From contig OZ249438.1 of the NCBI GenBank assembly GCA_965235115.1, positions 24,180,001-24,244,000 of the forward strand: DNA of 64,000 nt, given 5' to 3'. Positions 38,377-60,445 of this stretch are shown in pieces. Source of the stretch: Laetmonice hystrix. Lineage: Eukaryota. The notes beneath the pieces were generated by a model. It was not told the origin of the DNA. It ran no database searches and saw nothing but the letters and a program-made list of their open reading frames with translations. The translations under genes and the position numbers were made by a program. The first letter of the stretch is position 1. Every line of letters starts with the position of its first letter.

Positions 38377-41300
38377 ATGAAGTCCGAAGGGTCATACTAC
38401 CCTATCCAGGTAAGAGAGATATTCGTGGTTCCACTCGCCATAATCAGAATTCCAGCAGATTTGAATGCTATTTAATTTCATCAAAGGGGGAGATCTGCAT
38501 ATAGCCAAAGAATATGACAAAATGTTATTAAAAAAGAAAAGACTCTAAAAGCATGCAGTGTACCATACTTTAAAATTTTTTTCACAAGTTGCGACAAAGT
38601 ACTTCAGACCTTTTTAAATTGGCACAGAAAATAGACTGACCCTGCTGAAGTACAGTTTACCCAGAGGATTAGCACTCTGGTGGAAGTACTGAAGCAAGAA
38701 TTTAATTGACATACCTATAATATACTCGTGTATATTTCATTTATATAAGGGTACCATGACAAGTGCTTTCCTTTGTAAGGTAAGAGGTAAATTAGCAGAG
38801 CGATAATCATTGGATTTTGCTTGCTTCCAGCCAGGAGTTCCTATCAGGAACTTTAGCAGAATGCCAGTGTTGGGAAAAAGATGGCGGGCCAACCGTCTGC
38901 TGTACATTGTGGCCGGCATCCTCATGTTTGGGGTCTTCCTGACGTTTGTCAATATCTACGAGCTGCGGAGGATGCAGGGCGATCATTTCAATACTCACAT
39001 CCCTGAGGTGGAGGCATCAACCAGTGGTGGTACCAAGCATCGCATTGTCTGGATAAATGGCAAGAAGGTGGGTGCAAACTTTAAATGACAAAAAGCCTGA
39101 TGAGGGATTAAAGAGAAAAATGTGAATTCGTATTTCTTGGGATTTTAGTATGTATTAAGATTATCTAGTTTGCCCTGGCTGGATGTGTATTGATTTCAGC
39201 TAATATTCTGGGTTCATAAGTCCACGAGATATCTGTCACAAATCACAATACCTCAATGATTGTAAGCCGGAATGATTCCTGCCAAGTGGGATAAGACATT
39301 CTGTAGTGGCAAAGTGGCAACTGTTTTGTATTAGTACTGCCAGTAATTAGCCTCGGTGCATGATAGTGTTCAGTCTCCTCTTGTGTGCATACAATACCAG
39401 TGATAACACCCACATTGGCCAGCTTTGATCATACAAACAAATTAGAGATCCTTGTGTTTCCCTTTTGGTTAGATCAATACTAAAGGTACCGGGTACACAT
39501 TGTGCACTGGTATATTGATGGGGCAGATAAGTGCTGGTATGAGAAAGCCACAGGATACTCTTAGAACTGTTTAATTGATTGAACACTACAAAGTAACGTG
39601 ATGCTTATTGCTAACCTATTGAAACGTTTATAAAACAGAATAGTCACACTGCTGACTGGACATAGTACTGGACGATATTTTTCATCATAGAGTCAGCCGT
39701 TGAATTTGGTCTTTTTAGTTGGTATGTATTTGAGGCTGATGTCCCAGCCCTTGATACATATCTAAGGCTGGTGTGTCAGTCTTTTGTAGCTATCTCCGGC
39801 TGGTGTAAAAGGTCATACTGTAATATCTGTTACCGTTTGACATGTCAGACCGTGATGTCATCCTTAGATATGTGACATTACTTGTGTTACAGCTGGGCTC
39901 TGGATACCTTAATCATGTGATGAAGGTGTTTGATCGGGTTGGATACCAGCGCGGCACCATGAACTCGGACTGGGATGTACTCTGGTGTCATGATTACCCA
40001 TTCATAAGCTTACACAAACACCTCGTCAATTTGAAGCCTCATCAAAGGGTACGGTTGCCCCTCATTCGTTACTAGGATCTTGTTTCTCACATCCAACAAA
40101 AATTACTTGGGTCACATACTTTTATTTTACCGGTGCAGTGGCTGTAAAGTTCTATGAAACTATGGCATTTCAAAACGACAAGTTTGTACTGGATAACCCT
40201 TTATTTTATTATTTTAAAGCTATATTCTCACATAAAAATGGGAATGACAGCATTTGTCTTTTCAGGTGAACCACTTCCCAGGCTCAGGCTTTGTTACCAA
40301 CAAGTTAAATTTGGCCTTGTCCAAAGTCAAGTTCATCCCAAAGGCCTTTAAGATACCGCGTGATAAAAGTGCCTTTCAGCAGTTTGTACGTTTGTTTATT
40401 CTTATTGCATTTGATTCTTTTTTTTCAAGTTGCATGCTTTAATTGAACAGTTTGTGACTTTATATTGATAAAAGTAGAGTCCAGAGTTTATTTGTACCAG
40501 GCTGCCGGGCTGATGATATCATTTTCACAGAAATAAACGAGCAAATTCATATGATCATGAGGGGGTTTATATTGTGATGGGTTTACACATAATACATGTA
40601 GAACTTTATAAATGTCTGTGGTTATACTTCAGGCCCAAGAACATCCTGAGTGGAAATGGGTTCAAAAAAGCAACAGCCACCGAGGGGTCAAGATACTTGG
40701 TCTTGATGGTAATTATTATTTCCCATTAGATTTCTCTTCGTCATAACATCATGCTGTAAAAAGTTACTCTGCACGGTTCACATGGTATGCATCGATCAAG
40801 GAATACTAGAACGTTAAGGGTAAACCTGCACCAGTTACGTACTTGTTCTATTAGGAGAATGGTAATCTCAGCAAAAGGAAATCGCTTGAGTCAGCTTTGC
40901 TCAGCACTGTTCACCCTGGGTTTGTTTCAGAGCTTGATATGACGAGTCAGAATAGTTTCATCCAACAGTATGTGGACGACCCGTTACTTATTGATGGACG
41001 TCGTTTTGATATTGGTGTCTACACAGCTGTCACTTCAATAAACCCACTCAGGATATACATCAACCAGGGAGATTGGCTCGTAAGGTAAGTCAGGCACAGT
41101 CTAACAGATAGGACTTCATGACAGGTTCATAACTTAACAACAGCTGTGGTGTCTGTACAGGATGTATACCGGTGACGCATAATGACTTTAGAGAAAACAA
41201 TTAAAGTACCCTGGTAGGCCTATATACGTTGCAGGGCAGTCAGGCACTATTAAATATATGGGAAGTCGCAAAGTGAAAGGTCAAGAAGTGTACTGATCAC

Positions 41301-44110
41301 AGGATAAAGGTAAGGAGTTTTTGCCGGTTGAAATCCATTAAAGTTATAATTCCTCCTGCCACAAATTTAGGTCAGTTTGGCAGTTTGTAGATTAGAGCTA
41401 TCCTCACTCCATTCTTTGCCCCATCTTGCTCAAGTCCCAATAATATTACGATATGATGTGCATCAATGGTTTGTGGTAGATTGTTAGTGACAATGTCTTT
41501 TACTTAGACCTGTGGTTTGATATGTAATGAAAGGTGGATGTTTGTCCTTCAGTTTTCAAATATTTATTTACAGGTTTTGTCCACTCGAGTATCATCCATT
41601 TGACCAGACTATTTTACAAAAATACGTGGTCAATGATAACTACCTGCCTGTGTGGAAAGTATGTATTAGAATTGATATTTAATTTATTAAATTATAGGAA
41701 TACATCTCTTGGGTATTATTTATCTACACAAAATGCAAATCAATTAATCATGGACACTGGCATACAGCTGTCAGACTTATATACATCTGGTAGCTTTAAT
41801 AAGAAATCGAACAGTATTGCATGAAAATGGAGTGTGAGAACTATGAGTTTGGTTGACAGGAAATGGTTCTGTTTTCATTTTTTCCATCTTGTTAGGTACC
41901 TTCTTTGAAGAAATATTACAGTGAGCTTGGTTATACATTCCGAGAGTCTCTCTTTACATATCTCAAGTCCAAAGGTAGGTTTGGTATGGTTTCTGCAATG
42001 AAATCATGAAATCATATTTTTCATCAAATACCAGTATAGAGAATCTTACAAAGTTTTTTAAAGCTCTGTTTAAAATCTAATGTAATTATTAAAATGATTT
42101 GTTGAAAAATATCACTAACTGCATCATGCAAATTACTTGAGTGCTGGTTGTGAAGAAGTATCTTAGCGGAATCTGTGTGGTGTCCATAAACTGCAGTCAG
42201 ATTTAGCCATGGCAATCTACCGGTACTGTAATAATTATACGGTACGTCAGTAACCCCTGTGAAGTACTGGGCGTGGCTACTGGTTATCCCTTTGTGCAAA
42301 CAGAGTGTTCAGATCTTTTAATGAACAGACTACAGGCTGAAGATGTCAGTGGGTACTCTAACGGACAGGTCTTGTTCAAATGTCCTCCTGAAGTCTGTGT
42401 GAGTAGAGAAAGATCTTTGACTGGCTGGAGATTGTATTTTCAGACCATGACGTCGATCAACTCCAGGAGAATGTAATGGAGGCCATCCGTACTGTGTACA
42501 GGTCACAGGAGGCCAACCTGATCAAAGCAGCCAGCAAGTACAAGTCCTCCAGGTATGCACGCCTTGGCATAAATTATACAGGTGTTTGACCTCCTTTTTA
42601 AAAATAGGGTAATGATTGGTTTGGTATGCATGAGTAAGAGAAAATACAGGTATTACTACTTGAGAGGGAATGGGTCACATCTCATGATTCGACTCTTGTA
42701 TCAGTTATAAACATTACAATTTTTGTCAGACATCCTGTACAATATCAGACTGATTACATGGCTTTTTTTTTGTCAGGAATTTCTTTGAGATGGTTCGGTT
42801 TGACTTCGTATTGGACGCCAAGATGCAACTCTACTTACTCGAGGTGAACATGTCGCCCAACCTCTCTTCTGGCCACTTCCCACCCAACAAGCAGCTTTAT
42901 GAATCTGTTGTCTTTGGGCTGCTCAATCTGGTAGGGGTAGCCAGGGCAGTTGATCATGATTTCCCTCAAAGGTAAGACTTTGTCATGGTGACCAGACTAA
43001 AATCAAATGTTGGTATAATATACTTTACAACCTATAAAAAGTTGGAATTGTCTGATGTTGATATGAACTGCTCTTATTGCAGTTTTGGGGATGAGGCTGA
43101 CATGCAGGTTTCTGACCGTGACATAGCTATCCACGCCAGCAGCTGTGCGTTAGACGTCTGTGAAGAGAATTGTCGCCGCCTGGTGAGTAATTGGTAAACT
43201 ACTCTGTGCAGCTGGTAGCCAGGAATATACAAGAACACAGCAATGCCAGACTCTATTGATTGTATACAACTACATTGGTAGATGCTGGGTTATGTTGCTT
43301 GGGAATGGACAAATAATGGGATCAGTTAGAGTGTCATGTGACTGAATGAAATTATGACACATCTGATACAGTAGACAATAAGTATAATCACATCATACGA
43401 CATGTGCAGTGTTGATCAGGTGAGATCATAGAATCGTGGTAATCCACAGTTGTACGCCATTTAATACAAACATTGGACCACTGAAAGGATGAGATTCAGT
43501 TAGTATGTCAGCATGTGAAGGAGCCAGTTGGTTGACAGGCACATAATTTGTTCCCTCCAGGAGTGTCGGTTATGTCCCGGCTGTGTGACAGCTGAGCTCA
43601 AGGTCACCTTGAAACGTGCTTACCTGGAGCACGTCAATCGTCGCACCTGGAGACGAGTTCTCCCAGCACCTTTTGAGGTCAGCATCGCCATCTTAATCAT
43701 TAAAAAAAACTGTCATCGAGTTGGTTTTTTTTTACTTCCAGGGTTGCTTTCTCATTTTTTATGGCTTTCTGTAGAAATAGTTTTGAAATAGAGTTAGAGT
43801 AATTCTACTAGTTATTAAACTTTCATTTGAATTCTATGTTTCCGACTTTGACCAGGGTGTCCTAAAGTTTTGTTATGGTATACAGTATGGGTTTTTTGGT
43901 ATCCGTATTTGAGCATATATGTTTACCCGTCGGTATAAAGCCAGTGAGATGCGTTAACGACGCTGTGACCCTTATTTCCAGGACCAGAGCGAAGCAGAGA
44001 ACTGGCTGCCGACGTCCGATGCCATCTACCGTAATTCAACTAGCAAAAATCAATACATGCACCTCTGGTTCCAAGGCAAATGTCTGCAGGACGCCACCTG
44101 GTGTTCGTAG
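38377..44110 (+). CDS. ttll-15: TTL-family ATP-grasp ligase, TTLL15-like, with N-terminal signal anchor (paralog A)
   Basis: Exons 38377-38409, 38831-39067, 39893-40048, 40266-40385, 40633-40708, 40931-41084, 41574-41658, 41896-41974, 42444-42552, 42777-42971, 43083-43182, 43561-43677, 43982-44110; all GT-AG and in phase. Motifs: WDVLW..DYPF, VNHFPGSG, WVQKSNSHRGVKI, FIQQYVDDPLLIDGRRFDIGVY, FEMVRFDFVLD..LLEVNMSPNLSS, WFQGKC.QD..WCS*. The start could instead be the later Met of MPVLGKR. A 5'UTR exon ends at 35934. The subfamily name comes from recalled motif similarity, not a search. Confidence 0.88.
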
Positions 44111-44371
44111 AAGTACTATTGTGTGTTGTGTGGCCCTGGTGGCTGTTTGAATAACTACGACTTTGTTTAGAGCTGGTTGTAAGTGAGAGCACAGTGTAAT
44201 GTGGATCATGACTTGCCTTCAATACATCCGTCCTGGTAGATATTTAAAGGTGATCAGGCTGTTTTAGAACAGTATTGTATCTAAGATAGTGTACATGTTG
44301 AATGTTACAGTAAACCTTCAGACGAGCAGTGGCTGGTCTAGTTACAGGAAGTTTTGTGTGCTTTGAAAGTA

Positions 44372-45092
44372 CAGTGTTACCTGTTCGATTATTGGGCCAT
44401 TGATGCAAACAGTGTTACCTGTTCGATTGTTGGGCCATTGATGCAAACAGTGTTACCTGTTCGATTGTTGGGCCATTGATGCAAACAGTGTTACCTGTTC
44501 GATTGTTGGGCCATTGATGCAAACAGTGTTACCTGTTCGATTGTTGGGCCATTGATGCAAACAGTGTTACCTGTTCGATTGTTGGGCCATTGATGCAAAC
44601 AGTGTCACCTGTTCGATTGTTGGGCCATTGATGCAAACAGTGTTACCTGTTCGATTGTTGGGCCATTGATGCAAACAGTGTTACCTGTTCGATTGTTAGG
44701 CCATTGATGCAAACAGTGTTACCTGTTCAGTTGTTGGGCCATTGATGCAAACAGTGTTGCCTGTTCAGTTGTTGGGCCATTGATGCAAACAGTGTTACCT
44801 GTTCGATTGTTGGGCCATTGATGCAAACAGTGTTACCTGTTCGATTGTTGGGCCATTGATGCAAACAGTGTTACCTGTTCGATTGTTGGGCCATTGATGC
44901 AAACAGTGTTACCTGTTCAGTTGTTGGGCCATTGATGCAAACAGTGTTACCTGTTCGATTGTTGGGCCATTGATGCAAACAGTGTTACCTGTTCGATTGT
45001 TGGGCCATTGATGCAAACAGTGTTACCTGTTCGATTGTTGGGCCATTGATGCAAACAGTGTTACCTGTTCGATTGTTGGGCCATTGATGCGA
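44372..45092. repeat. 38-bp minisatellite (~19 copies) downstream of paralog A
   Basis: Unit CAGTGTTACCTGTTCGATTGTTGGGCCATTGATGCAAA, contiguous. Confidence 0.97.
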
Positions 45093-48000
45093 ACTCGATT
45101 AGATTTAAATACTCGCATAACTTAATCAAAAATAATACACTTGTCAGTGACTACTTGTCTGGTGTATTCATTCAACAGATAATAATATTGAATTCATTAA
45201 AAAGGTGTTTGTTATTCAGCTTAAGTTCATTGTTTACCTGGATGAAATTACATTTTGCTTCACCGTAAATGGTGAAGCCTACCCAAGGTCATTCAGGAAG
45301 CAAGGTTAGGGATCTAGTCTTGCTTATTATATCTTTAGTTTCACCACCGTTTGCGATATCAGCAGGCCCATCGGTGGATTAGTTACGTCGGTTTTTGTGT
45401 TTTAATTTATTTCTTTTGTTTTTTTATATAGATAGATTTTATTATTTCTTCTGTCTATCAACTATTTGCATAAGTGAAGATGTAAGGACGCAGTAAAATT
45501 GCATCCGGTACAAAATGTTAGTGTATAAAGGCCAAACTGCTACAAAGGTGCAGCAGATATGATTTGAAATACTTGCAGATGTCGATGGCGGTGTTGTGTA
45601 TGTGATACAGGGTTGTAACTACCAATGGTCGGTAGTCTAGGCCGTCAGGTTGGTATAATTGATGGTTCTCATGGAGATTAGGTATTTTTACAGGTATCAA
45701 AGTATCGTGACAGCACAATGAAACAGTGGGATTATTCTCCTCCAAAACTAATTACTGGGACATGCATTAATATACAGGTAGATGCGGTAACCGTCAATGC
45801 ATATCAGGTCAAACAGTGGGTGATGTAATTTATGCAGTGAGTCTATAACTTTATATTTTCCTTTTTGTTAATTCAACATAAAAGGTTTCACCTATACAGG
45901 TTTTTAGAAATCCAGCCACTTAATTGCAAACTGGGATTTCTATGTATTGTCAGTAAGCAGAACGTAGCATTTAATGTTTCGAATACGATATAACGTGTGT
46001 TTTGCTACATCATCAACTAGTGAGAAATGTAATTGTTGACTGAAGTATTACAGTATACACATGTAGATATATATAAGATGTACGTATATAATATGTAACA
46101 TTGACCCGAGAGGTAAAGACAGAAGGGCCATAGAACCCCTGTTAGATGGCCCACATACTTGTTCAATGAGCAACATACGAAGACTTACCGGTAGACGAAA
46201 CGGTTGCCATGACAATTTATGAAGTCGCTAATACATGTACAAGGTTGAGTATTCCAAAACAAAGACTTAGTGCGTACGCATAATATTGCAAATATTATAC
46301 ATTTCCATTGAATACACCAAAAGAAACCTAAGGTGTGTACCAATGAGTTTGAAGTCTGGATGTGTAAAGGTTCCGTAGAGATGAGAAAAGGCAGTCAAAG
46401 CAGGTCTCGTAGTCTTTGAATAAAATGAATGCGGCAGTGGATGAGATGGTTGAATGTGACCGAGGATTGGCTTGTTTTGGGGGGACCTACCTGCAAGCCG
46501 TGACGGGACTGGGGGACATTCCATACAATGTGTCGTGTTTTGTTTTCACTACTCCTCTGACGAGATTGTTTCCTAATGTCTACATGTTATTTGAATGTGT
46601 ACGATTACATATCGTACCTGGCGAGATTTACATTATTTAACCATATGCACTATTGAGTTTTGGCCTTTCTTGTTATTTTCATATCGCAAGGAAATGACAT
46701 TTGTGTTGATATGCCAATAAAATATAACTATTAAAGCAGACTGGTTTAGATGATGCCACGTAATCAGGGCTGTTATGTGCACATTTCTACTCAAAGACCG
46801 TCTATCGTTGAGATTTAGACTGAAGAGCATCCGGACAGCACAACAGCGCTTTAACAACACTGGTTTCTTTTCAGTTTGCACTGATTCTATTATGTTACCA
46901 TTATCGTTATTTTTTCGGAAATTTATACGTGTATACAATTTCATTTATCCGATGGTCATAACTAAAGAATGCCAGAGGCCTATATGGCTGTGAGCGGAAA
47001 GGTTCGTAATACACCGCGAGTGTGTTGTATTTTCAGCTTTTGCTGTACATGTGCTATGTTTTTTAACAAATGAAAATGACTTACGAAATGCATATCACTA
47101 GGTAAACGACATAAATGAGATAATGGGATCTGGAGTATAATAATCCTAGGTCCGTTTTTACGACTTTGTACTGTTTTAAAATGTCGTTTCTGTCATGAGA
47201 ATGGCCCCGGTTTCCGATATGACTTTTGACCACCGAGACTTACTCGCTGTGAACAAAACTTTAATGTAACAAAATTGAAGAGAAAATAAAAATGAAGTAG
47301 ACAGGAATTCCGACGTTCTGTTGTTAATGGTAGTTGCATCTTCAGACCAGTGACATGAACTAGGCTATTGTTTCTGAACACTCATATCTCCTGTGAAATT
47401 TGTTGTAAAGTTATAAGAAAACGTCTAAAATGGGCAACTGATTTTAACCGTTTATGAAGCGTTTGCTGCCTGGGATTTAGAATACGAGCCTTACGAGGGC
47501 ATCTATAATCTCCCCTGTCGTGACTTTGCCAACGAAAAAAGGTTTCAATTATACACTATTACACTATTAATACATCACAGCAAAGAGGGGCTGAAATTTA
47601 TTAAATGCCATTTCGAAGATAAGACTTTCTTCTCGACGTCACGATCCATTAGTCGGAGAATGTAGTTCTAATCTCCAAATCGGACTTCTTGTCACATAAT
47701 GCAAATTTTGAAAGCTGTGCTCAGAATGCTTAACCTAACTGTAGTGTGCCCAACTGCTTTACTTTACTCCATTACCATTTTTTAAATATTTTTTATTTAT
47801 TATCATTGCATTCATCCCACCAGCTCAGACCAGGGTAAGAAACGCGACCAGACAACGTCCCATCGCTCATACCTTGACATCGTCTAAGTGCATGTTTGTA
47901 AAGGTACAAAACAGCGACGGTAATAGTCTTTCATTGCATTTCAGAATCCGCCGTGCTGAGTTATTTACGGGTAGGACAAGCGTCATCAGATATGACGGAT

Positions 48001-48739
48001 TTAGGCAGGAGGAGGAGGCAACATTCGACTCCATACGATGGTTTTGTACATCAATCAATGCCAGTCTGGGACCTGTGTAGGGATGAGTGCATGTCGGAAT
48101 CTGAACCCTTGGAATAGGCTTACGGTTGTCTAAGTTGGAGGTATCATGTACTAGATCCCGCCACCAGGTGGACACTGTCCACTATGGACATGATGGAATA
48201 CGAACCAGGAAGATCATACATCAAGATGATACATGTAATATACACATTATATTATGTAGCTAACGGACGCTATCCCCTTCTCTTGAATTAATCTTACGAT
48301 TGGTCAAACCAGGGAAACGATACACTAATATAAAGTGTTAATCCCATTACATTGTATTTGCAAAGCTAAAACCTATATGTGGTCATTAGCCAATGTAGCC
48401 GACTAAAATCCCGAATCCAGGCATGCTAGCCAAACACATTGTTAAAGTACAAAAGATACATGTGCTCTTAGTGGCGGATGCCTTTAAAAAATATGGGCCT
48501 TGCACATGTTGTTGATACTTCCTGGTGTCAGTTTTTCTTCACTGAAATTGAAGTGCTGCCACCCCGCGGAAAAAATCTTCACACTGCATGGAAGTCCGCC
48601 AAGAACAGTCTTTTGTCGGTGAAAGCGATATGTACCAACCCCTGTTACAATAATATTCTCATTGATTTTTTTAAATTCAATCTAGTTTGATTCCTCATCA
48701 TTACTTTCACACGTGTCAAGCTCAGTTGCTCTTCATGTT

Positions 48740-50673: not shown

Positions 50674-51700
50674 CCAGAACGATAGCTCCGATACGGAACA
50701 GACTCAGTGGTCTCGACATACAATAGATGCTTGAAGGCTTGGAAGGGAGCAAGGAAAACTCGATCAACCAACCAAATCTGACCAGTACGACTATAGCTCC
50801 GATACGGAACAGACTCAGTGGTCTCGGCATACAATAGATACATGAAGACTTGGAAGGGAGCAAGGAAAACTCGATCAACCAACCAAATCTGACCAGAACG
50901 ATAGCTCCGATACGGAACAGACTCAGTGGTCTCGACATACAATAGATGCTTGAAGGCTTGGAAGGGAGCAAGGAAAACTCGATCAACCAACCAAATCTGA
51001 CCAGTACGACTATAGCTCCGATACGGAACAGACTCAGTGGTCTCGGCATACAATAGATACATGAAGACTTGGAAGGGAGCAAGGAAAACTCGATCAACCA
51101 ACCAAATCTGACCAGTACGATAGCTCCGATACGGAACAGACTCAGTGGTCTCGGCATAGATACATGAAGGCTTGGAAGGGAGCAAGGAAAACTCGATCAA
51201 CCAACCAAATCTGACCAGTACGATAGCTCCGATACGGAACAGACTCAGTGGTCTCGGCATAGATACATGAAGGCTTGGAAGGGAGCAAGGAAAACTCGAT
51301 CAACCAACCAAATCTGACCAGTACGACTATAGCTCCGATACGGAACAGACTCAGTGGTCTCGGCATAGATACATGAAGGCTTGGAAGGGACCAAGGAAAA
51401 CTCGATCAACCAACCAAATCTGACCAGTACGATAGCTCCGATACGGAACAGACTCAGTGGTCTCGGCATAGATACATGAAGGATTGGAAGGGAGCAAGGA
51501 AAACTTGATCAACCAACCAAATCTGACCAGAACGACTAGCTCCGATACGGAACAGACTCAGTGGTCTCGGCATACAATAGATGCTTGAAGGCTTGGAAGG
51601 GAGCAAGGAAAACTCGATCAACCAACCAAATCTGACCAGTACGATAGCTCCGATACGGAACAGACTCAGTGGGCTCGACATACAATAGATGCTTGAAGGC
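50525..51700. repeat. Tandem array of 103-112-bp units (~11 copies)
   Basis: Unit CTTGGAAGGGAGCAAGGAAAACTCGATCAACCAACCAAATCTGACCAG...CAGACTCAGTGGTCTCG, with small indel variants. Confidence 0.95.
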
Positions 51701-53922
51701 GATTCACAAGAGAATCGTTACATCAGACATACTCTGTACGCTGCTGATGCTGCAACACCGTTCGACGTGAGAGGTGGGTGTGAATTCCATGCTTTAATCA
51801 GGGTGCACCTATTATTCTGTTCGGCTCGTGCTGACTTAGGCTGACCTAGGCTATAGGTTAGATAAGGCCTCTACTCATTCCAGTTTTCTCTTGTCGGTTT
51901 ATCGCCCGGTTCATCGGCTGTTCAAGTCAATGCCAGGTCAACTAGGTATTTTGTCAACAAGCAGCCATAAGACGATCACTTCATAGCGACAACAGGCAAC
52001 TGGAATGTGGAATTTCATTATATTTCTCCCTTTCTGTGGGTATACATTAATTGATGTATGTAGTCTAAGGCCTTATGGAACCTGACAGCCCATATCTGTA
52101 TTTTGGAGTCACTATAAATAAGAGATAGTCGGTGTTTGCTTTAAGGAGTAAAGTTGTAGGCTTATATTTTGATAAGCCGTCTCTCTGCATGGGGGCCTAC
52201 TGATATCCGTATATGTACATGTACGTACATATGTATGCACGTATGTGGCCTATACGTCTATGCATGGGTGGCCCTATATGTATCCATGCATGCATGTGTC
52301 CATGCATGCTGCACCTCTAACTATTGTGTATTTATAGACATATGCTTGCGTACATATAGGTTAACCTACATTTATATGTCTTCCGCCTTTTAGTATTGAA
52401 GGTGATGAAAGCAGCGGTTCCTACAAGTTGAAATCTTGTGTACCATCCATGCTTTCATGTCCGTTTATGGTAATACCATTCCAGCGACATCTAACTTTTT
52501 CCTCTCAAACCGGATTGGTGCTTACCGACTGAATGTTTTACAAACATTCGCAAGACAAATAATGCAGTGGTCGGCTTTGAGATTGGGAACAAAAGAAGGT
52601 TCGAACTACATCATTTTTTTTGGATTTGCCTCCCACCCGCATGTTAAACTGGATTCTCAGATATCCCCATGAGTCACAAAGTATCGCTAAGAGAACGGAA
52701 GGTGAAAAGCCAGATACATGTGCGTGTGATATATGAACACCCGCTTATATATACCCGCTGCCTTCCTCTTCCCAGCTGTGTCTTGTCAGGATGTATTTTG
52801 GTGATCACTACACCCGAAACAATCACTTAGGAAGAACCCCATTTCCTTTAACCTGCAGAAGTTGCTTTGAGTGTGCAGACCACGTTCGGTTCGGTCTCTT
52901 ACCGCCGCATCCCTGCGTTCGTTCAAATATACATTTTGCTTTACCCACGTCTATATACTTCATCCGTGTAAACAACGGCTTCGGCCCAACCAAGAACAAA
53001 CACATAACCACTTTATGGATTCCGGTGCTCAGTCGTTGAGGGAATGGCAAAATGCATGGGCAGTTCATTAGGAATGCTCAACGCGTGCACCTCACCGCTG
53101 TCAGTATCCCATTGAAATGGATCTCGCAGACATCTGTAAGTATTGAGACAGTAATCTTACCTGGTTGTTAGTAGACGGCACACACCGAGATGGGGTATGG
53201 CGGCCAGTAGATACAGCGCACAACAAGCGGTTTACATGTAAAAAGGTTCATATAAACAGGTAAAGGCCAAGAGGCATTACGTGAATGTCCTTTTCTACGC
53301 GCACGAGGAGCTACACATAAATTACACTTGTTTCTGCACACCTGGACTACTGGCTAACATTTTAATCCGGCCATGGCATACACGGGTAAATAAGGTTTGA
53401 CCTTTTTATACTCAGCTTCTTTCTCGGTTGTTAGGAATTATACTTTACCAAACACAAGATCATGTATAGGAAAACAAGGTTTTTCCTCCCTTTGGGGTTG
53501 TTTGCATGTTTTTCTTATTACATTGTACCGCCATATAAATACATCATCTTTGATTGACCTTTTATAGTTTTTAGAATTGCATTTGCATGCATGTTGAGCT
53601 TAGCAGGCGCTTCTTCGTGACTCTCTGGGAGATTACGGTAAAAGAGATGGTAAAAGAGACTTGCTGGTGACATCATTGTTGACTGGCTGTTGCAAGGCCC
53701 AAATACCCACCCACCCGACATCATTGTTGATCGTCATAATGCGTGGGGGCTTACAGATTTATGTGGTTTTGTCCATCAGCATAGGCTTTTTAAAAAGGTG
53801 TAACCAATATTTGCGCTAGCCTTATAGCCTTTTTATAGGGAGGCCCATTCCTCAAATCGTGAACTGTTAACAGTCCAATAATGAAATGAGCTCTTTCGCC
53901 CTTTGAATCGTATGCAGAAGAG

Positions 53923-56900
53923 TTGGTGCGACTCCTGAGAGGGGATATGACCCGTCCGTCCCGCTGTCTGCTCTGCGCCCGTCCCGTCAAAGTTGGACTT
54001 CTCCTCGCCATCATTCTCGTGGCCTTTCTCCACCTCGTGCCCGGTCCGTACTCCCCACATGACTTACCAGCGCATAGAGACGTCCGAGCCAGGACCAACA
54101 GGAAGCAAACCTCAGGGTCCCGGAGACACGGATCGGACCGGCGGACCGGGCAGCACCAGCGGCCAGAGGCGCCGATGCGTCAGCTGCACGCCGAGCCTCC
54201 CGCGCCGCCTGGCGTTGCCGATTTGAAGAAAGCAGACGATCGTCTTCAGCTACGCCCGCCACTCTTGCCCGTACCACCAGACATATCGCCCAAACACTCG
54301 GAGCATCCCTTGAAAATCATTGCAGAGGAGAAGAAAGCGTACTTTCCGTGCGCTTGGGTGGACTACAAGGCAAATGATGTGAGGGTAGTTCATCAATTAT
54401 ATATTAGGCCTATATAATATTATAGGGGAGCAATTATTTGTCATGAAGTGAGAGGACCTATAATATTGGATAGAACAACGTTAGAAAATCCATTAAACGA
54501 CTTCTAAAATCGTGTCCGTAGATCTCTATGTGTGCGGGAGTGTGTGCGTGGGAACACCTGTAGTAAGACAAATACAGGCTCGAAGGGTCCGAAAAAAGTC
54601 CGTTAAATATTATCAGCACTTTTTTCACAATGCACACCCTGTTTATTTCTGTCAGGATCTCACGCATCACGTGATTGTCACCTTCCGAAAGCTTGGTTAC
54701 AAGATCCACCACCGAAACGAGACGTTCGTCGACTGTGACGTCATCTGGACGTTCGACTATCCGTTCTGGAGTAAATGTTGGAACAAGGACCTCGTCCGCC
54801 ACATTACTCGGCGGCTAGGACGCTATCAAAAGGTATGCGTTTTATAAAGTCAGCACCGACCCCCCCCCCCCCCCCCCCAAATAAGGTCCCATATGTCAGG
54901 GGAGAATAAGGCACATATCCGATAGGAAATACCCTACATTGAAATTGGGAGGTCGTATAGCCTCCCTTCCCTCTATCCTTGATAATGTGAATATACACAT
55001 AGAGACAGAGAGAGAATGAAAGAGAGACGTGACCAGAAAGACAGAGAGAGAGAGAGAGAGACAGAGACGTGACCAGTCTATGCTGTAGGTGAATCACTTC
55101 CCCGGTATCGGTTACGTGGCCGACAAGGTGAACCTGGCTCGGTCGAGCTTCCCTTTCACACCGCCCGCTTTCATCCTGCCGGGAGAGGCTGAAGACTTTC
55201 TGAAAGCGGTAAGTCCACCTCCTTTATACCAAACAATTATACATTTGCATCTTTTCCGTTAACGTATACATTTATCTTGCCCGTGTAGAGCAAATACCTC
55301 GTTTCCGACTACACTCTTGTACATTACGGCTTTTATATTGCATTTGAACCTTAAACGTCGGGGATCTCAGTTCTAAAATTTGCTTTGCCGCTTGAAAGGC
55401 TATTGTCAGCATGGTTCTGTGGCCGCGTATGTATGGGGACATAGGCTAGGTGTTGGTGTCATGAGTGCGCAGCCGGCCGAAAAAAGGAAGCAGAGTGAAG
55501 GAGTGGCTGGATATCAGCAGGCCTACAGAGCCATTGGCCAAAAAGAAACTTTGTTGAACCATTATGTTTTCCTGTAAGAACAACAAAAAATCTGCCTAGT
55601 ATGAATCGTACACTTCTTCAGATCTAGGCCTATATGCTTATCAAAACTGTGCTTCACGGTCTCCTGTTTGGGAAGGGTTTCTCTTGCTTGATGTGAACAT
55701 TGCACCTTTTGCCCAGTAGACGCGCCATCACCCGACATGGATGTGGGTTCAGAAGAACAGGGGTCACCGCGGGGTGAAGATCACCAAGCCCCAGGGTACG
55801 TGCCCACATGCACAGCTCTTCCCCTTTCGGAAAATCTCGGCTATTCCCGGAATATTCAGGGGTTAGCTCTGCCCATAGACAATAATCACGCGCACGCGCA
55901 CGCGCATGCGCACCACCGTACCTATGTGGAAATGATTTAGTACGCGTCTTTGCTTTTGTTCAAGGTATTATTACTCAGAATGTGGCAGGAGGTGAAAATT
56001 ACACCCGTATTAAAGTGGTTGTCGCACGAGTTTCATGAAGGCCCTGACAATTCCTAATGTGTAAAAAATGATAAAAGTGGACAAGTCGTCTTCAATACGA
56101 TTGGAAATGTTCTGTTTTAGACACGTTCTCATGAAAAGACGGATATTATGATAGATAAACTGATTATCAATGCTTAACCCATGTCATAACAACCGTGAGA
56201 TATTTCCAGAGGTTGACCTGCGAGGTAATGGAACTTTCGTGCAGTACTACGTAGATTCACCACTACTAATCGACGGACGGTAAGAAAGAACAATGTCTCC
56301 CCAAGATATTAGTGGTACCCGTTAATAGCTTAAACCTGTTTGTAAAGTTAATAATATGACTGATATAGTCCCCCCCCTCATCCTTCATTTATTTGGTAAA
56401 ATGAGCTCGAGGAAATCCAAAATTAGTGGGAAAGGTTTATAAAACCACTTAATTTGTTTTCATAGTCCTGAATGGGTCCCTTAATCGTACGATCTCCGTG
56501 CATTACGACGTTGAGGTCATGAATATCATGTCCATATATACTGTACACATATATCTTCGACCAGGAAGTTCGACTTCAGCGTTTACGTAGCCTTGACCTC
56601 AGTGAACCCGCTGAGGCTCTACATATATGGCGGGGACTGGGCTGTGAGGTAGGCACCGACAGGAGCAAACGTCATCAGTAGACATTTTATCAGGCCACGC
56701 AAGTTTGTTTTACGCCGATTGTCAACAAAGTGTATCACTTTAATAAATAAATCCTGAGGAGACAAATTCACCTAAGAAAACAACCTCTTGCTCTTGAATT
56801 TCACATGAAATCTAGCGTTTTATGTATACCACCAAGGCTGCCCCAAGATTTGGACTACTTGATTTGTTCAGATTTTGCCGGAGGCCATACGAGCCGTTTG

Positions 56901-59900
56901 ATGCCAGCGACACGAATCGTTACGTGCTGTATGGAGCGGACCACGTGCCCATCTGGGAGGTAAGGTCATGTGCCTGGCAAACTACTCCGAATAAAGCCCT
57001 AATCTCATACACGGAACCTTTTTGTGCCTCAAAATCGAATGATGTCGCCAAGCTCCATTTTGATATTCCAAAACCATTCTCAGGATTGTAGTGTATTACT
57101 GTCTTTACAATAAAACCAATCTCAGGATTGTAGTGTATAACTGTCTCAACGATAAAACCATTCTCAGGATTGTAGTTATAACTGTCTCTACGATAAAACC
57201 ATTCTCAGGATTGTAGTGTATAACTGTCTCAACGATAAAACCAATCTCAGGATTGTAGTGTATAACTGTCTCAACGATAAAACCATTCTCAGAATTGTAG
57301 TGTATAACTGTCTCGACGATAAAACCATTCTCAGGATTGTAGTGTATAACTGTCTCTACGATAAAACCAATCTCAGGATTGTAGTTTATAACTGTCTCAA
57401 CGATAAAACCATTCTCAGGATTGTAGTGTATAACTGTCTCAACGATAAAACCATTCTCAGGATTGTAGTGTATAACTGTCTCAACGATAAAACCATTCTC
57501 AGGATTGTAGTGTATAACTGTCTCTACGATAAGTGTCATTATGTAAGAATGGCAGACGACCAGATACATTTTCATTACAGATGCCGTCCCTTACTTACTA
57601 CTGGAAGTCGGGCTATGGGTTTAAGAAATCACTATTTATATATCTGAAGCAAAAAGGTATTTTTCTTTGTAGCATTTTTAAGTCATGTTCCACCAATTGT
57701 ATGTACTCAGACGACAGATGAAGATCAACTCATAATTCGTAGCTATTTGGATCATGGTGCTCCACCTAAAACTCGGTCTACAACATTGCACAACGGCAAG
57801 AAACGACTCTGTGTTTTTGTATCAGAGAGAGTCATTTTCGACAGAAAATCTATTTCCGGTATTCGTAAATCATCTTAGTGTGTATCGTTTCGCAGGACAT
57901 GATATCGACAAGCTGGAAAGTTCCATTTACGACATTGTCCGAAGTGTCTTTCAAGCCAAAGAAAAAGACTTCGTTCGAGCTGTTAAACTTGATTTCTTTG
58001 CATACAATGATACAAGGTAATCCTTCTGGGTTCTTTCCTTCAAAGTTTACATGATACATGTATAATACAGTCACAGTTCAGTTTCCAGAATTATTACCTG
58101 ACTGGTGTGGATGGTAGAAACAAAAGATGAAAGGCTCGATCCATCAACTACCTTTTGCATTTGTGATGTTAAATCTTTACTCATTTGCCTAATATGAAGC
58201 TGCCCCCTTACACAGAAATCTCTTCGAATTGGTGCGTTTTGACTTCATACTTGACAAGACCATGCGAGTCTATCTAATGGAGGTATGAAATTAATTTAGA
58301 TTCTTCGTGAAAACAATGGCCGTCTTACCTCGAACCAGTTGACCAAACATAAAAATGAAAACGTTACTTTATCAAATATTGAGTAATATTACAGATAAAT
58401 ATGTCTCCTGACCTGTCGACTGTACATGGAGGTCCTCGCGGAGAGCTCTATCAGAACATCATCTATGGATTCCTAAGTATGGCGTCGATCAGCACTGTTT
58501 TAAAGGATAAAACGGGAAAACGGTAGGCCAATACCCAATCTTTAACAAAAGAACTTTGTGAGACAGAAACCTTTTTCTTGTATAACAGTTTTACATCTAA
58601 TGAGGTTTTAGTGGCATGAAATGCATGGATTTCGTACTGATTGTTCGTAACTTGTCTTATCTAGGATTAGCCAAATACGAACATAATCTACACCCACATA
58701 GTAGAGTGTGCTGTAAGACTTTCTGCTTTGGACATTCTGAATGTTTGTGGTTTAAGCCCGGTGCACTCGAACAGGGGGGATACAGTTCTATATACCTAAA
58801 GACTAAATTTCGATGTCCCTTGGGAATCCTATTCCGTACTAAGTACCAATATTTTGTAGCTTTAAGGTCAATTCTTAAACGTCGTGAACACTTATAGGCC
58901 TAGGCCTAATGTTTTGTGTAAAGGTTCCTAGTAGAAATTGGTCAACTTTGGTATTGCTATTATGTTCTGGGGTCCACTATTTATTCTTATCTCTTGACTC
59001 TGGAAACAAGTAGGTCCTACCGGCACAGTCTAATAGATGTATAAGACAAGAATTGGTCCCTCTATAGGGTCCTTGGTGACACGGGCTTGATGGTATCGAC
59101 GCGTGATCTGCGCGTTTTCGAGGACGAATGTGAATCCAACCGGTGTCAGGATAGCTGTGAAATTGATGTAAGCAATCCTTCATCCACTTGCCTGGAGAGA
59201 AACTCGCGAAAACTCCATACTCACCCAATTTGGGTAAAAATGCCTTGAACTTTCTTTGCACACATTTCACGCGGATCTTGGGCTCCGAAAGGGGTGACAA
59301 GGATCCTCTAAATTTAAAGGGGTGCAATAGGAGTCCGGTGGGACCCCCTGCATCCTGCCACTTCATCCACCCATGAATGGTGATGCAGTACGCACAAGCC
59401 CTCTTGGGTCTCCGCTAGGGGGCCAAGGCCAAGTTGGTAGAAAAGTGAACGTGAGCACGTGGGTAGGCCATAGATGTGTACTAAGACAGTACACATCTAT
59501 GGATAAGCCTACTCATTGATGCCTCACTTGGCAAGGCAAGGCGGTCGAAATGCGGCAGCGCCTACTGGCGGGACTTTGGGGAAACCGGAAACAGATAACG
59601 TCTGGATTGCATATTTTTCGAAAATTCCCACCAGGGTGCGCTGCGGCATTTCGACCTGTTTGTGCAAGGCATTGAGCCGAGTCCTCATTATACAAAAAAC
59701 AGTCTTTTCCGGATAGCCTAACATATCTCACACGTCTGGCGTTCGTTTTCCGGATAGCCTAACATATCTCGCACGCCTGGGGTGCGTTTCAAAACAATTG
59801 TAACCCTGTCGTGCGTAAAAATCCCCATTGAAAATACATTGGACAAGCTAATGACAGGTTGTGAAACGCACCCTCCCCCTTGGGGGGGGATAACTGGACG

Positions 59901-60445
59901 GCCAGTTATAACTTCATTTTTCTCATCATTCAAACATGAAATTTTAACATGGTGTTTGCTGAGGGTAACTTTTTGAGGAATTTAAGATGCCGCTTTAAAT
60001 ACACACTGAATTTGTTTTGTGTACGTCTCTAGGTGTGTCAGTTGTGTCCAGGGTGTCTGAAGAGTGATATTGAAGAGCAGCTCCGTACAGCGCACATTGA
60101 ACACAATCACAAACAAGGCTTTAGGCGTCTCGTGCCGAAACCCTTCGCGGTAAGGTGCTCACCAATACATAGGCCAATAATGAGGTCGACTCTGGAGTTT
60201 TTAAATTTTTTAATAGTGGAGTTTAGGTGAGGCGGGAGAGGTAGTCTATCCAAATAGAATGTTTAGGCTACACCAGTGTCGGATTTGTCTGTTATCACGA
60301 TGATGTTACTCTTCAGAATCAGCAGCATGCACGATTGTGGACGTTAGAGGACGACCCCGCCGTGAAATCAATGACTCAGGTCAATCGTCTGCTTTACATC
60401 TGGTTTCGCGGGAAGTGTTTACAGGATGCTAACTGGTGTTCGTAG
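53923..60445 (+). CDS. ttll-15: TTL-family ATP-grasp ligase, TTLL15-like, with signal anchor and long Pro/Arg-rich stem (paralog B)
   Basis: Exons 53923 (or 53947)-54378, 54656-54832, 55089-55208, 55720-55795, 56210-56279, 56565-56648, 56872-56959, 57581-57656, 57896-58016, 58216-58282, 58395-58522, 59068-59167, 60033-60149, 60317-60445; all GT-AG and in phase. Motifs: CDVIWTFDYPF, VNHFPGIG, WVQKNRGHRGVKI, FVQYYVDSPLLIDGRKFDFSVY, FELVRFDFILD..LMEINMSP, WFRGKCLQDANWCS*. Confidence 0.88.
57070..57531. repeat. 42-bp intronic minisatellite (~11 copies)
   Basis: Unit AGGATTGTAGTGTATAACTGTCTCAACGATAAAACCATTCTC, in intron 56960-57580 of paralog B. Confidence 0.95.

What the first reader, a model, noticed from the sequence alone, without database searches (positions are those of the whole stretch)
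38377..60445. Tandem pair of TTL-family ligases built like Golgi enzymes: candidate lumenal peptide-ligation system
Seen: both proteins have a short basic N-tail, one hydrophobic helix (A: KRWRANR-LLYIVAGILMFGVFLTFVNIY; B: RPVK-VGLLLAIILVAFLHLV), a stem, then the ATP-grasp core. Both have a conserved Cys-rich C-terminus (C..C...C...C.LCPGC; WFxGKCxQDxxWCS*). N-x-S/T sequons lie on the catalytic side (A: NST; B: NET, NGT, NDT). Established: characterised TTL/TTLL enzymes are cytosolic or ciliary and add Tyr, Glu or Gly to tubulin tails; basic tail plus TM plus stem is type II Golgi-enzyme topology by the positive-inside rule. Inference: the catalytic domain faces the lumen, cannot reach tubulin, and ligates amino acids or amines to secreted proteins or glycans. 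That would be an undescribed secretory-pathway modification hidden under a 'tubulin polyglutamylase' label.
Basis: partly seen in the sequence, partly recalled or inferred. Interest (0 to 1): 0.82.

Follow-up and report, generated by a model that had tools for sequence, protein, structure and literature searches.

The report
Membrane-anchored TTLL15 ligase gene pair
Two neighbouring genes encode TTLL15-type relatives of the tubulin-modifying ligases; their N-terminal membrane anchor and cysteine pattern, conserved from sponges to lampreys, suggest the enzyme works inside the secretory pathway rather than on microtubules, but no experiment has tested this.

Summary
The window carries two intact, same-strand TTL-family genes. 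A has 12 exons and encodes 508 aa. B has 14 exons and encodes 594 aa. A is an orthologue of animal "ttll-15". B is a fast-evolving paralogue, 40% identical to A.

- 119 of 134 full-length homologues have one N-terminal hydrophobic segment, and almost none has a second.
- The N-side flank is more positive than the C-side flank in 111 of 119.
- Eight C-terminal cysteines are invariant.
- Other cysteines are about six times rarer on the catalytic side than in the N-tail.
- Caenorhabditis copies carry only a 13-residue, signal-peptide-like segment.

All of this favours a lumen-facing catalytic domain, but it remains inference.

The sequon argument fails.

New here: the clade lacks residues that define TTLL glutamylases. 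In TTLL6 numbering, K377 is Tyr, R219 is Gly and N264 is Tyr. The Mg and ATP lysine ligands are kept. This fits published C. elegans data showing that ttll-15 loss does not change tubulin glutamylation.

The substrate and chemistry are unknown. I rate it a new variant of a known family, and a testable one.

The parts
38861..44110 (+). Gene A, a TTLL15 orthologue: CDS of 12 exons (38861-39067, 39893-40048, 40266-40385, 40633-40708, 40931-41084, 41574-41658, 41896-41974, 42444-42552, 42777-42971, 43083-43182, 43561-43677, 43982-44110 including the stop), 508 aa
   Evidence: Hand-built model with 11 GT-AG introns. It aligns end to end at 56% identity with P0197. It is sister to P0197 and groups with the annelid Owenia.
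38861..38896 (+). Gene A: basic N-terminal tail (residues 1-12, four K/R), predicted cytosolic
38897..38959 (+). Gene A: 21-residue uncharged hydrophobic span (residues 13-33), the predicted signal anchor. It is bounded by R on the N-side and E on the C-side.
   Evidence: The homologous segment in P0197 is modelled as a long helix (residues 28-62).
42777..42971 (+). Gene A exon 9: catalytic core with the Mg ligands (RFDF, LLEVN), the invariant NMSPNLSS motif, and the invariant Tyr370 that replaces TTLL6 K377
   Evidence: Pfam TTL hit. Column statistics. Mapping to TTLL6.
40931..41084 (+). Gene A exon 5: the FDIG strand (Gly215 in place of TTLL6 R219) and the central ATP-grasp strands
43083..44110 (+). 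Gene A exons 10-12: Cys-rich C-terminal subdomain (C415, C420, C424, C429, C432, C435, C500, C507)
   Evidence: All eight cysteines are about 99% conserved. The subdomain folds confidently on its own (pLDDT 86.9) with no PDB or Pfam match.
53947..60445 (+). Gene B, a divergent TTLL15 paralogue: CDS of 14 exons (53947-54378, 54656-54832, 55089-55208, 55720-55795, 56210-56279, 56565-56648, 56872-56959, 57581-57656, 57896-58016, 58216-58282, 58395-58522, 59068-59167, 60033-60149, 60317-60445 including the stop), 594 aa
   Evidence: It is 40% identical to A. It shares 10 of A's 11 intron positions and phases exactly, and the first within 3 alignment columns. It has two extra introns. Its branch is very long (1.42 against 0.41 for A) and its placement in the tree is unsupported.
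53992..54048 (+). Gene B: hydrophobic core of the predicted signal anchor (residues 16-34), preceded by a 15-residue tail with four K/R
54049..54345 (+). Gene B: long Pro/Arg-rich, low-complexity stem (about 100 residues) between the anchor and the catalytic domain
   Evidence: Read directly from the sequence. No Pfam hit on exon 1.
58216..58522 (+). Gene B exons 10-11: the catalytic motif split by an extra intron (…YLME | INMSPDLST…). B alone has Asp where the clade has the invariant Asn357.
59068..60445 (+). Gene B exons 12-14: Cys-rich C-terminal subdomain (C501, C506, C510, C515, C518, C521, C586, C593)
44111..53946 (.). Intergenic spacer of 9.8 kb between A and B, carrying two minisatellites (44371-45094, 38-bp unit x19; 50526-51700, 103/219-bp unit)

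Best explanation
Both genes encode single-pass membrane proteins of the animal TTLL15 clade. I take them to be type II. A short basic N-tail stays in the cytosol. One uncleaved signal anchor of about 22 residues spans the membrane. A short (A) or long (B) disordered stem leads to a TTL-fold ATP-grasp domain, which is translocated into the ER/Golgi lumen or onward to the cell surface.

The ATP-grasp domain is capped by a clade-specific helical subdomain. Its eight invariant cysteines most likely form four disulfides.

The catalytic centre keeps what is needed to bind Mg-ATP and to form an acyl-phosphate on a carboxylate. It has been rebuilt at the positions that make other TTLLs glutamylases. 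The enzyme therefore most likely ligates something other than glutamate to a non-tubulin, lumenal carboxylate substrate.

Status of each step:
- Shown: gene structures, fold, anchor, charge asymmetry, cysteine pattern, active-site substitutions.
- Inferred: orientation, disulfides, activity.
- Unknown: compartment, donor and acceptor.

A is the conserved orthologue. B is a tandem paralogue that has diverged at several clade-invariant active-site positions.
For: Fold and family:
- Pfam TTL hits on the exons.
- An AF2 model of the closest homologue has pLDDT 90.4. TTLL6 is the best PDB match, with TM-score 0.73 normalised to the target, and E 2e-24 by sequence.

Anchor:
- 119 of 134 full-length homologues have an N-terminal 19-residue window with Kyte-Doolittle score >=1.6 (median 2.37). 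Only 2 have a second such segment.
- Most exceptions look like truncated gene models.
- The uncharged span has a median length of 22 residues.

Orientation:
- Net charge of the N-flank exceeds that of the C-flank in 111 of 119, is equal in 7, and is reversed in 1.
- The residue just before the span is R or K in 113 of 116.
- Five Caenorhabditis orthologues, including C. elegans TTLL-15, have only a 13-residue h-region after a 7-residue n-region. That resembles a signal peptide and is too short for a stable cytosol-facing anchor.

Oxidising-compartment signature:
- Eight C-terminal cysteines are about 99% conserved.
- Non-invariant cysteines make up 0.27% of the C-side, against 1.56% of the N-tail and 2.34% of the hydrophobic segment.
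- The aligned core of cytosolic TTLL6 has 9 Cys in about 302 residues (my count from the alignment).

Not a glutamylase:
- The TTLL6 structure paper (bioRxiv 10.1101/2020.06.07.139295, read) states that K283 and K377 are invariant in all TTLL glutamylases. It also states that R219, R241 and N264 are essential.
- In the clade, the K377 position is Tyr in 119 of 119, R219 is Gly in 117 of 119, N264 falls on an invariant Tyr, H362 is Met, and the beta5-beta6 loop is 3 residues shorter.
- K125, K174, R182, R241, D346, E359 and N361 are kept.
- The C-terminal 120 residues have a median net charge of 0, so there is no cationic microtubule-binding domain.

Genetics in C. elegans:
- ttll-15(tm3871) leaves GT335 staining at wild-type level (PMC5051658).
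- Adding it to multiple ttll knockouts did not lower glutamylation (PMC11216746).
- It is not among the ttll deletions reported to suppress the ccpp-1 defect (PMC7592914).
Against: - No experiment shows the topology. It rests on the positive-inside rule and on composition.
- All characterised TTL/TTLL enzymes are cytosolic, nuclear or ciliary.
- A clade-invariant good sequon (N357-L-S) sits four residues after the Mg-binding Asn, next to the acceptor groove. A glycan there might hinder catalysis in a lumenal enzyme.
- Sequons elsewhere are not enriched or conserved.
- Cysteine parity is uninformative: there are nine invariant Cys, and 50% of proteins have an even total.
- The C-x2-C-x2-C spacing could bind Zn or Fe-S in a cytosolic protein. 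I had no model coordinates to check S-S distances.
- Loss of R219 and N264 equivalents, each essential in TTLL6, could mean the domain is catalytically dead.
- The homologues are phylogenetically related, so the counts overstate the number of independent observations.
Confidence: 0.6

Rival explanations
1. A membrane-tethered but cytosol-facing TTLL. The N-terminal helix anchors the enzyme to the cytosolic face of an organelle or the plasma membrane (reverse signal anchor, or post-translational insertion). The Cys cluster is a zinc or other metal site. The enzyme modifies tubulin or another cytosolic protein near that membrane.
For: - Every characterised relative acts in the cytosol, nucleus or cilium (established knowledge; for TTLL6).
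- The C-x2-C-x2-C spacing is compatible with metal binding.
- The invariant NLS sequon beside the active site would be harmless in the cytosol.
- There is no conserved glycosylation site elsewhere.
Against: - The charge asymmetry is the opposite of what reverse signal anchors show: N-flank more positive in 111 of 119, and R/K at the N-boundary in 113 of 116.
- N-tails have a median length of 26 residues and are basic.
- Caenorhabditis h-regions of 13 residues cannot span a bilayer.
- A metal site does not explain the six-fold depletion of non-invariant Cys on the C-side.
- The glutamylase determinants K377, R219 and N264 are absent, and there is no cationic MT-binding region.
- C. elegans mutants show no glutamylation defect.
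Confidence: 0.2
2. A lumenal or secreted pseudoenzyme. The TTL fold is kept as a binding or scaffolding module (for a nucleotide, or for an acidic peptide) and forms no bond, as has been proposed for TTLL12.
For: - Equivalents of R219 and N264 are replaced by Gly and Tyr throughout the clade. Alanine mutants of these residues bring TTLL6 activity to background.
- No enzymatic activity has been reported for any TTLL15 in the papers found.
Against: - The Mg ligands (D338, E351, N353 in A), both ATP lysines (K134, K173), R178 and R238 are invariant in 119 of 119.
- The replacement residues are themselves invariant and polar (H177, D259, Y261, N357, Y370). That looks like a remodelled active site rather than a decayed one.
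- Identity between phyla is 45-55%.
Confidence: 0.15
3. Gene B is a decaying or non-functional duplicate, so only A matters. The 'pair' is not a two-enzyme system.
For: - B sits on a branch about 3.5 times longer than A's, with unsupported placement.
- B alone departs from clade-invariant residues: G215 to S, N357 to D, D259 to A, Y261 to H, N366 to R.
- There is no evidence of functional coupling with A beyond adjacency.
Against: - B has an open reading frame across 14 exons with all GT-AG splice sites.
- It keeps all nine conserved Cys, the anchor, the Mg ligands, both ATP lysines and Tyr370.
Confidence: 0.2

Closest known systems
C. elegans TTLL-15 (NP_505663; P0323 here) and the proteins NCBI names 'probable tubulin polyglutamylase ttll-15'
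   Same: Same clade. It shares the FDIG strand, the GDDYxPxW loop, NMSPNLSS, the Tyr at the K377 position, the eight C-terminal Cys, the C-terminal W-C ending, and an N-terminal hydrophobic signal.
   Different: - The Caenorhabditis N-terminal segment is only 13 residues and resembles a signal peptide, whereas A and B have 21-23-residue anchors.
- Gene B diverges at several clade-invariant positions.
TTLL6 and the other TTLL glutamylases (TTLL4, 5, 7, 11; PDB 6VZQ-6VZW, 4YLR, 9HQ4)
   Same: - ATP-grasp TTL fold (Foldseek TM-score 0.73 normalised to the target).
- Same Mg ligands, ATP lysines and R241 equivalent.
- The mechanism is presumably acyl-phosphate formation followed by attack of an amine.
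   Different: - No N-terminal anchor is described in the TTLL6 paper read, and none is known to me for TTLL4, 5, 7 or 11.
- The clade has Tyr for K377, Gly for R219, Tyr for N264 and Met for H362.
- The beta5-beta6 loop is shorter.
- There is no cationic MT-binding domain.
- It has an extra Cys-rich subdomain with no PDB match.
Tubulin tyrosine ligase (TTL)
   Same: Same fold. According to the TTLL6 paper, TTL also has Tyr at the position of TTLL6 K377, where it stacks on the donor tyrosine.
   Different: - TTL has Glu at the K283 position, where the clade keeps K/R.
- TTL keeps R202 (equivalent to R219).
- TTL is soluble and cytosolic and binds the tubulin dimer.
Type II Golgi enzymes and secretory-pathway ATP users such as FAM20C/VLK kinases and TPST (comparison from general knowledge, not tested here)
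   Same: Same architecture: short basic cytosolic tail, one signal anchor, a disordered stem and a lumenal catalytic domain with conserved cysteines. FAM20C shows that ATP-dependent protein modification occurs in the Golgi lumen.
   Different: Unrelated folds and chemistry. No TTL-family member has been placed in the lumen.
TTLL12 (a TTLL with no demonstrated ligase activity)
   Same: A TTL-fold protein whose 'tubulin ligase' label is not borne out by activity (PMC3520985, abstract seen).
   Different: TTLL12 is cytosolic, has a SET-like domain, and has no anchor or Cys-rich domain.

Membership tests
TTL/TTLL superfamily (Pfam PF03133, ATP-grasp) | Significant match to the TTL profile and an ATP-grasp fold | tested here: met
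   - Exon hits to PF03133 down to E 7.9e-15.
- All homologues carry PF03133.
- The AF2 model matches TTLL6, TTLL7, TTLL11 and TTL.
TTL/TTLL superfamily (Pfam PF03133, ATP-grasp) | Mg-ATP ligands: two Lys, and Asp/Glu/Asn of the D…E-x-N motif | tested here: met
   K134, K173, D338, E351 and N353 (A numbering) are present in 119 of 119, including both A and B.
TTLL15 clade | Reciprocal closest similarity to proteins named ttll-15, including the C. elegans founder | tested here: met
   - A is 48-56% identical over its full length to the clade.
- C. elegans TTLL-15 was retrieved in the same family search and shares the motifs.
- A nests inside the clade in the tree.
- B lies within the family, but its position is unsupported.
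TTLL glutamylases | Two invariant lysines (TTLL6 K283 and K377) that hold the donor glutamate's gamma-carboxylate | tested here: not met
   The K283 position is K/R (110 of 119). The K377 position is Tyr in 119 of 119, in both A and B.
TTLL glutamylases | Arg pair R219/R241 and Asn264 of the HLTN loop, which coordinate the transferred phosphate and the beta-phosphate | tested here: not met
   R241 is kept. R219 is Gly in 117 of 119 (Ser in B). N264 aligns with an invariant Tyr (His in B). This rests on sequence alignment only, with no structural superposition at residue level.
TTLL glutamylases | Cationic microtubule-binding domain after the core (autonomous glutamylases) | tested here: not met
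   - Net charge of the last 120 residues is 0 at the median, -4 in A and -1 in B.
- Chawla et al. found no cMTBD in C. elegans TTLL-15.
TTLL glutamylases | Tubulin glutamylation activity | not testable with these tools
   Only indirect evidence: C. elegans ttll-15 mutants keep wild-type GT335 staining.
Type II single-pass secretory-pathway enzymes | One N-terminal uncleaved hydrophobic segment long enough to span a bilayer, and no other TM segment | tested here: met
   - Kyte-Doolittle 19-residue maximum of 2.28 (A) and 2.42 (B).
- Uncharged spans of 21 and 23 residues.
- Clade: 119 of 134 positive, and only 2 with a second segment.
- No dedicated predictor (DeepTMHMM/SignalP) was available.
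Type II single-pass secretory-pathway enzymes | Positive-inside charge asymmetry with the N-flank more positive | tested here: met
   - N-flank minus C-flank net charge is +5 in both A and B.
- It is above 0 in 111 of 119.
- R/K borders the span on the N-side in 113 of 116.
Type II single-pass secretory-pathway enzymes | Flexible stem between the anchor and the catalytic domain | tested here: met
   In the AF2 model of P0197, pLDDT averages 48 over residues 61-70 and 60 over residues 71-80, after the 28-62 helix. B has a Pro/Arg-rich stretch of about 100 residues.
Type II single-pass secretory-pathway enzymes | Lumenal domain with disulfides and N-glycans | tested here: inconclusive
   - Eight invariant Cys, and six-fold depletion of other Cys on the C-side, fit disulfides.
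- Geometry could not be checked.
- Sequons are not enriched or conserved apart from two inside the catalytic motif.
Type II single-pass secretory-pathway enzymes | Golgi (or ER) residence | not testable with these tools
   No localisation data were found in the literature searches.

The most novel reading that the evidence does not exclude
TTLL15 enzymes are active lumenal (ER/Golgi or cell-surface) ATP-grasp ligases. They add an amino acid or amine other than glutamate to carboxylates of secreted or membrane proteins, or of acidic glycans. That would be a secretory-pathway modification not yet described. It would be present in most animal phyla from sponges to lampreys, and it was not recovered from jawed vertebrates in these searches.
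Probability: 0.35. Interest if true: 0.9.

Novelty: new variant of a known kind. Interest (0 to 1): 0.66.

Why it matters
The TTLL family is the textbook writer of the 'tubulin code'. All of its characterised members work on cytosolic, nuclear or ciliary substrates. A clade conserved across animals that is targeted into the secretory pathway, and that has lost the glutamate-binding lysine, would have three consequences:
- The label 'probable tubulin polyglutamylase ttll-15', now spread over hundreds of genomes, would probably be wrong.
- It would explain why C. elegans ttll-15 mutants never showed a glutamylation phenotype.
- There may be an ATP-dependent amino-acid ligation on secreted or lumenal molecules that nobody has looked for.

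The idea can be tested directly with standard cell biology in C. elegans, where a deletion allele already exists, or by heterologous expression.

Tried and rejected
- **Sequon enrichment as evidence for a lumenal domain.** Rejected. The observed mean is 3.49 per protein against 2.54 after shuffling. Two of those are the catalytic-motif NMSP/NLSS, and no other column reaches 20%.
- **Cysteine parity.** Uninformative: 50% of proteins have an even count.
- **Naming the Cys-rich C-terminal subdomain.** No Pfam family. No PDB sequence match better than E 0.86. No Foldseek match better than E 6.6. The weak Endonuclease_7 hit on B's exon (E 0.0077, below the cut-off) is noise.
- **Disulfide versus metal geometry.** Not obtainable. 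The structure tool returns no coordinates, and none are stored in /data.
- **Placing B in the tree.** Long branch with local support 0.087. I cannot tell whether the duplication is recent or old.
- **Literature.** 'TTLL15' gave 0 papers and 'K07C5.7' gave 0. Searches combining TTLL with transmembrane, Golgi, lumen or secretory pathway found nothing relevant. A search for amino-acid- or taurine-modified glucuronic acid on invertebrate glycans, as a candidate substrate, found one general review, so I dropped it.
- **The window's own proteins.** They were not in the protein collections. The closest is 56% identical, so the species is not identified beyond 'annelid-like'.
- **RNA genes.** No tRNA genes and no Rfam matches in the window.
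- **Cytosolic TTLL control set for cysteine content.** I could not fetch one. The only control is TTLL6, as printed.
Full report
**1. What is in the sequence**

The region holds two multi-exon genes on the + strand. I built the models by hand from stop-free segments, canonical splice sites and tblastn against full-length homologues.

- Gene A: 12 exons, CDS 38861-44110, 508 aa.
- Gene B: 14 exons, CDS 53947-60445, 594 aa.
- All 24 introns are GT-AG.
- The two genes lie 9.8 kb apart, separated by minisatellites.
- The window has no third TTL copy.
- Exon translations hit Pfam TTL PF03133.
- A and B are 40% identical.
- B shares 10 of A's 11 intron positions and phases exactly, and the first within three alignment columns. 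B has two extra introns.

**2. Which family**

An exhaustive profile search with one catalytic exon was followed by three word-indexed searches. These recovered several hundred proteins that NCBI mostly names 'probable tubulin polyglutamylase ttll-15'.

Their range covers a sponge (Sycon), molluscs, annelid, brachiopod, nemerteans, bryozoan, priapulid, nematodes (including C. elegans TTLL-15, P0323), many arthropods, echinoderms, hemichordates, amphioxus and lampreys. No jawed vertebrate appeared in these lists, but I did not test absence formally.

A is at most 56% identical to anything in the collections. In a FastTree analysis it is sister to an unnamed Logan sequence and groups with the annelid Owenia (support 0.97). 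The window is therefore probably from an annelid-like lophotrochozoan.

B sits on a branch about 3.5 times longer than A's and has no supported position.

**3.

*Anchor.* I examined 134 homologues that start with Met and are 430-720 aa long.
- 119 have a 19-residue window with mean Kyte-Doolittle hydropathy >=1.6 before the NHFPG motif (median 2.37).
- Only two have a second such window anywhere else.
- Most of the 15 negatives look like 5'-truncated gene models. One begins inside the juxtamembrane motif.
- The uncharged span has a median of 22 residues and follows an N-tail of median 26 residues.

*Charge.*
- N-flank net charge exceeds C-flank net charge in 111 of 119, equals it in 7, and is lower in 1.
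- The residue bordering the span on the N-side is R or K in 113 of 116.
- A and B both score +5.

*Short h-regions.* Five Caenorhabditis orthologues, including C. elegans TTLL-15, have a 7-residue n-region and only a 13-residue h-region. That is the shape of a cleavable signal peptide and cannot serve as a cytosol-facing anchor.

*Cysteines.*
- Nine Cys columns are about 99% conserved.
- One lies in the core RFC motif. Eight lie in the C-terminal 95 residues, with the pattern C-x4-5-C-x3-7-C-x4-6-C-x2-C-x2-C … C-x6-C followed by 0-2 residues.
- Outside these columns, Cys makes up 0.27% of the C-side, against 1.56% of the N-tail and 2.34% of the hydrophobic segment.
- The nominal Fisher p-value is tiny, but it is inflated because the sequences are related.
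- For comparison, the aligned core of cytosolic TTLL6 shows 9 Cys in about 302 residues (my count from the alignment).

Few free cysteines alongside a block of invariant ones is what proteins of oxidising compartments look like.

- The mean is 3.49 per protein against 2.54 after shuffling.
- Two of those are the invariant NMSP and NLSS inside the catalytic motif.
- No other column exceeds 16%.
- NMSP includes the Mg-binding Asn and has Pro at +3, a poor acceptor context by general knowledge.
- N357-L-S is a good sequon beside the acceptor groove. That is a caveat for the lumenal model, or else a real glycosylation site. I cannot tell which.

**4. Structure**

An AF2 model of P0197, the closest homologue of A, built with a 110-sequence alignment, has pLDDT 90.4 and pTM 0.84. 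Its parts are:
- one long N-terminal helix (residues 28-62) covering the anchor and the conserved juxtamembrane motif;
- a low-confidence linker (block-mean pLDDT 48 over residues 61-70 and 60 over residues 71-80), which is the stem;
- a confident ATP-grasp domain that includes the Cys-rich end.

Foldseek puts TTLL6 first (TM-score 0.73 normalised to the target), followed by TTLL7, TTLL11 and TTL.

The Cys-rich subdomain folds confidently on its own (pLDDT 86.9) as short helices. It has no Pfam family, no PDB sequence match and no Foldseek match. I could not obtain coordinates, so disulfide versus metal geometry is untested.

**5. Active site**

I mapped the phmmer alignment to TTLL6 onto the residues described in the TTLL6 structure paper (bioRxiv 10.1101/2020.06.07.139295). 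I then counted those residues over 119 clade members.

Kept in 119 of 119 (A numbering):

| TTLL6 residue | Clade residue |
|---|---|
| K125 | K134 |
| K174 | K173 |
| R182 | R178 |
| R241 | R238 |
| D346 | D338 |
| E359 | E351 |
| N361 | N353 |

The K283 position is K or R in 110 of 119.

Changed, and themselves invariant:

| TTLL6 residue | In the clade | Count |
|---|---|---|
| R219 (transferred phosphate; mutant inactive) | Gly (Ser in B) | 117 of 119 |
| N264 of the HLTN loop (beta-phosphate; mutant inactive) | Tyr (His in B) | 118 of 119 |
| K377 (donor glutamate gamma-carboxylate; 'invariant across all TTLL glutamylases') | Tyr | 119 of 119 |
| H362 | Met | 119 of 119 |

In addition, the beta5-beta6 phosphate loop is three residues shorter and carries an invariant His.

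The paper notes that TTL has Tyr at the K377 position, where it stacks on the donor tyrosine.

The clade therefore fails a stated defining feature of glutamylases. It keeps the metal and nucleotide ligands. The replaced positions are conserved rather than drifting. I read this as a remodelled site with a different donor, and probably a different acceptor. A pseudoenzyme is the main alternative.

The last 120 residues are electrically neutral (median net charge 0). There is therefore no cationic microtubule-binding domain, as Chawla et al. already noted for C. elegans TTLL-15.

**6. Published functional data**

These concern only C. elegans.
- ttll-15(tm3871), an in-frame deletion removing the core, leaves GT335 staining of sensory cilia at wild-type level (PMC5051658).
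- Adding it to a ttll-4/5/9/12 multiple mutant did not reduce axonal polyglutamylation (PMC11216746).
- It is not among the ttll deletions reported to suppress ccpp-1 ciliary degeneration (PMC7592914).
- None of these papers mentions a membrane segment. PMC5051658 contains no occurrence of 'membrane'.
- Searches for TTLL together with transmembrane, Golgi, lumen or secretory pathway found nothing on the subject.
- I did not check automatic database annotations such as UniProt TM predictions. They may already flag the helix.

**7. Interpretation**

The best-supported reading (confidence 0.6) is that A and B are type II membrane proteins whose TTL-fold domain faces the lumen of the secretory pathway. 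In this reading the domain is stabilised by disulfides in a clade-specific subdomain and is not a tubulin glutamylase.

- Shown: genes, fold, anchor, charge bias, cysteine pattern, active-site substitutions.
- Inferred: orientation, disulfides, catalytic competence.
- Unknown: compartment (the Golgi is only a guess from the architecture), donor and acceptor.

Rivals:
- A cytosol-facing tethered enzyme with a metal-binding cluster (0.2).
- A lumenal pseudoenzyme (0.15).
- For B alone, a degenerating duplicate (0.2). B departs from the clade at G215, D259, Y261, N357 and N366. It keeps an intact ORF, the anchor, all conserved Cys and the Mg/ATP ligands.

Nothing indicates that A and B work together. 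'Tandem pair' describes their arrangement, not a system.

**8. Novelty and verdict**

The genes belong to a known and widely annotated family, so their existence is not new. What appears undescribed in the literature I could search is twofold. The whole clade carries secretory-pathway targeting signals, and it lacks the glutamylase determinants.

I rate this a new variant of a known kind, with interest 0.66. A tubulin-code specialist would be surprised, and the idea can be tested directly, but the key claim is still a prediction. If an actual lumenal ligation chemistry were demonstrated, interest would be about 0.9. I put that probability near 0.35.

Noticed in passing
window 3750-14171, - strand: Several exons encode annexin repeats: Pfam PF00191, E down to 3.9e-16, at 11328-11573, 11027-11296, 9538-9792, 5671-5922 and 3750-4007. 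Judging by their spread, there are probably two annexin genes upstream of gene A on the opposite strand.
   Followed up: partly
window 25355-25588, - strand: An exon-sized open segment matches Pfam Hmw_CFAP97 (Hemingway/CFAP97, E 2.2e-6, just above the cut-off). By general knowledge this is a cilium-associated family. Its position 13 kb from a TTLL gene is probably coincidence.
   Followed up: no
window 1-850, 915-1034, 9131-9656, 14173-14793, 18301-19039, 44371-45094, 50526-51700, 57070-57532: The window is rich in minisatellites with 15-219-bp units, up to 31 copies and 87-100% matches. One (42-bp unit x11) lies inside intron 7 of gene B. One (38-bp unit x19) starts 260 bp after gene A's stop. 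They create long spurious ORFs on both strands.
   Followed up: partly
window 36737-36851: A 39-bp unit, present in 2.9 copies, built of degenerate CCTAAC / CTTAAC / CACTAA motifs. It looks like an interstitial telomere-like repeat about 2 kb upstream of gene A.
   Followed up: no
gene A residues 28-38 (window 38942-38974) and the same position in homologues: A conserved motif (consensus L-T-x-L-N-x-Y-E-L) sits at the predicted lumenal end of the anchor. It is modelled as a continuation of the TM helix, and it is conserved between phyla. It could be an oligomerisation, sorting or shedding determinant. It is absent from B and from Caenorhabditis.
   Followed up: no
P0193, P0196 (Branchiostoma lanceolatum): Amphioxus also has at least two TTLL15 genes on one chromosome-sized contig (537 and 795 aa). 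Duplication of this gene is therefore not unique to the window's species.
   Followed up: no
cluster of P0029: The 90%-identity cluster of lamprey TTLL15 also lists a 56-aa 'hypothetical protein' from a Thermosipho metagenome bin (P0266). This is presumably contamination or a clustering artefact in the public data.
   Followed up: no
window 61683-62174, - strand: An open segment of 164 codons downstream of gene B with no Pfam match. It may be an exon of an unrelated gene, or it may be non-coding.
   Followed up: partly
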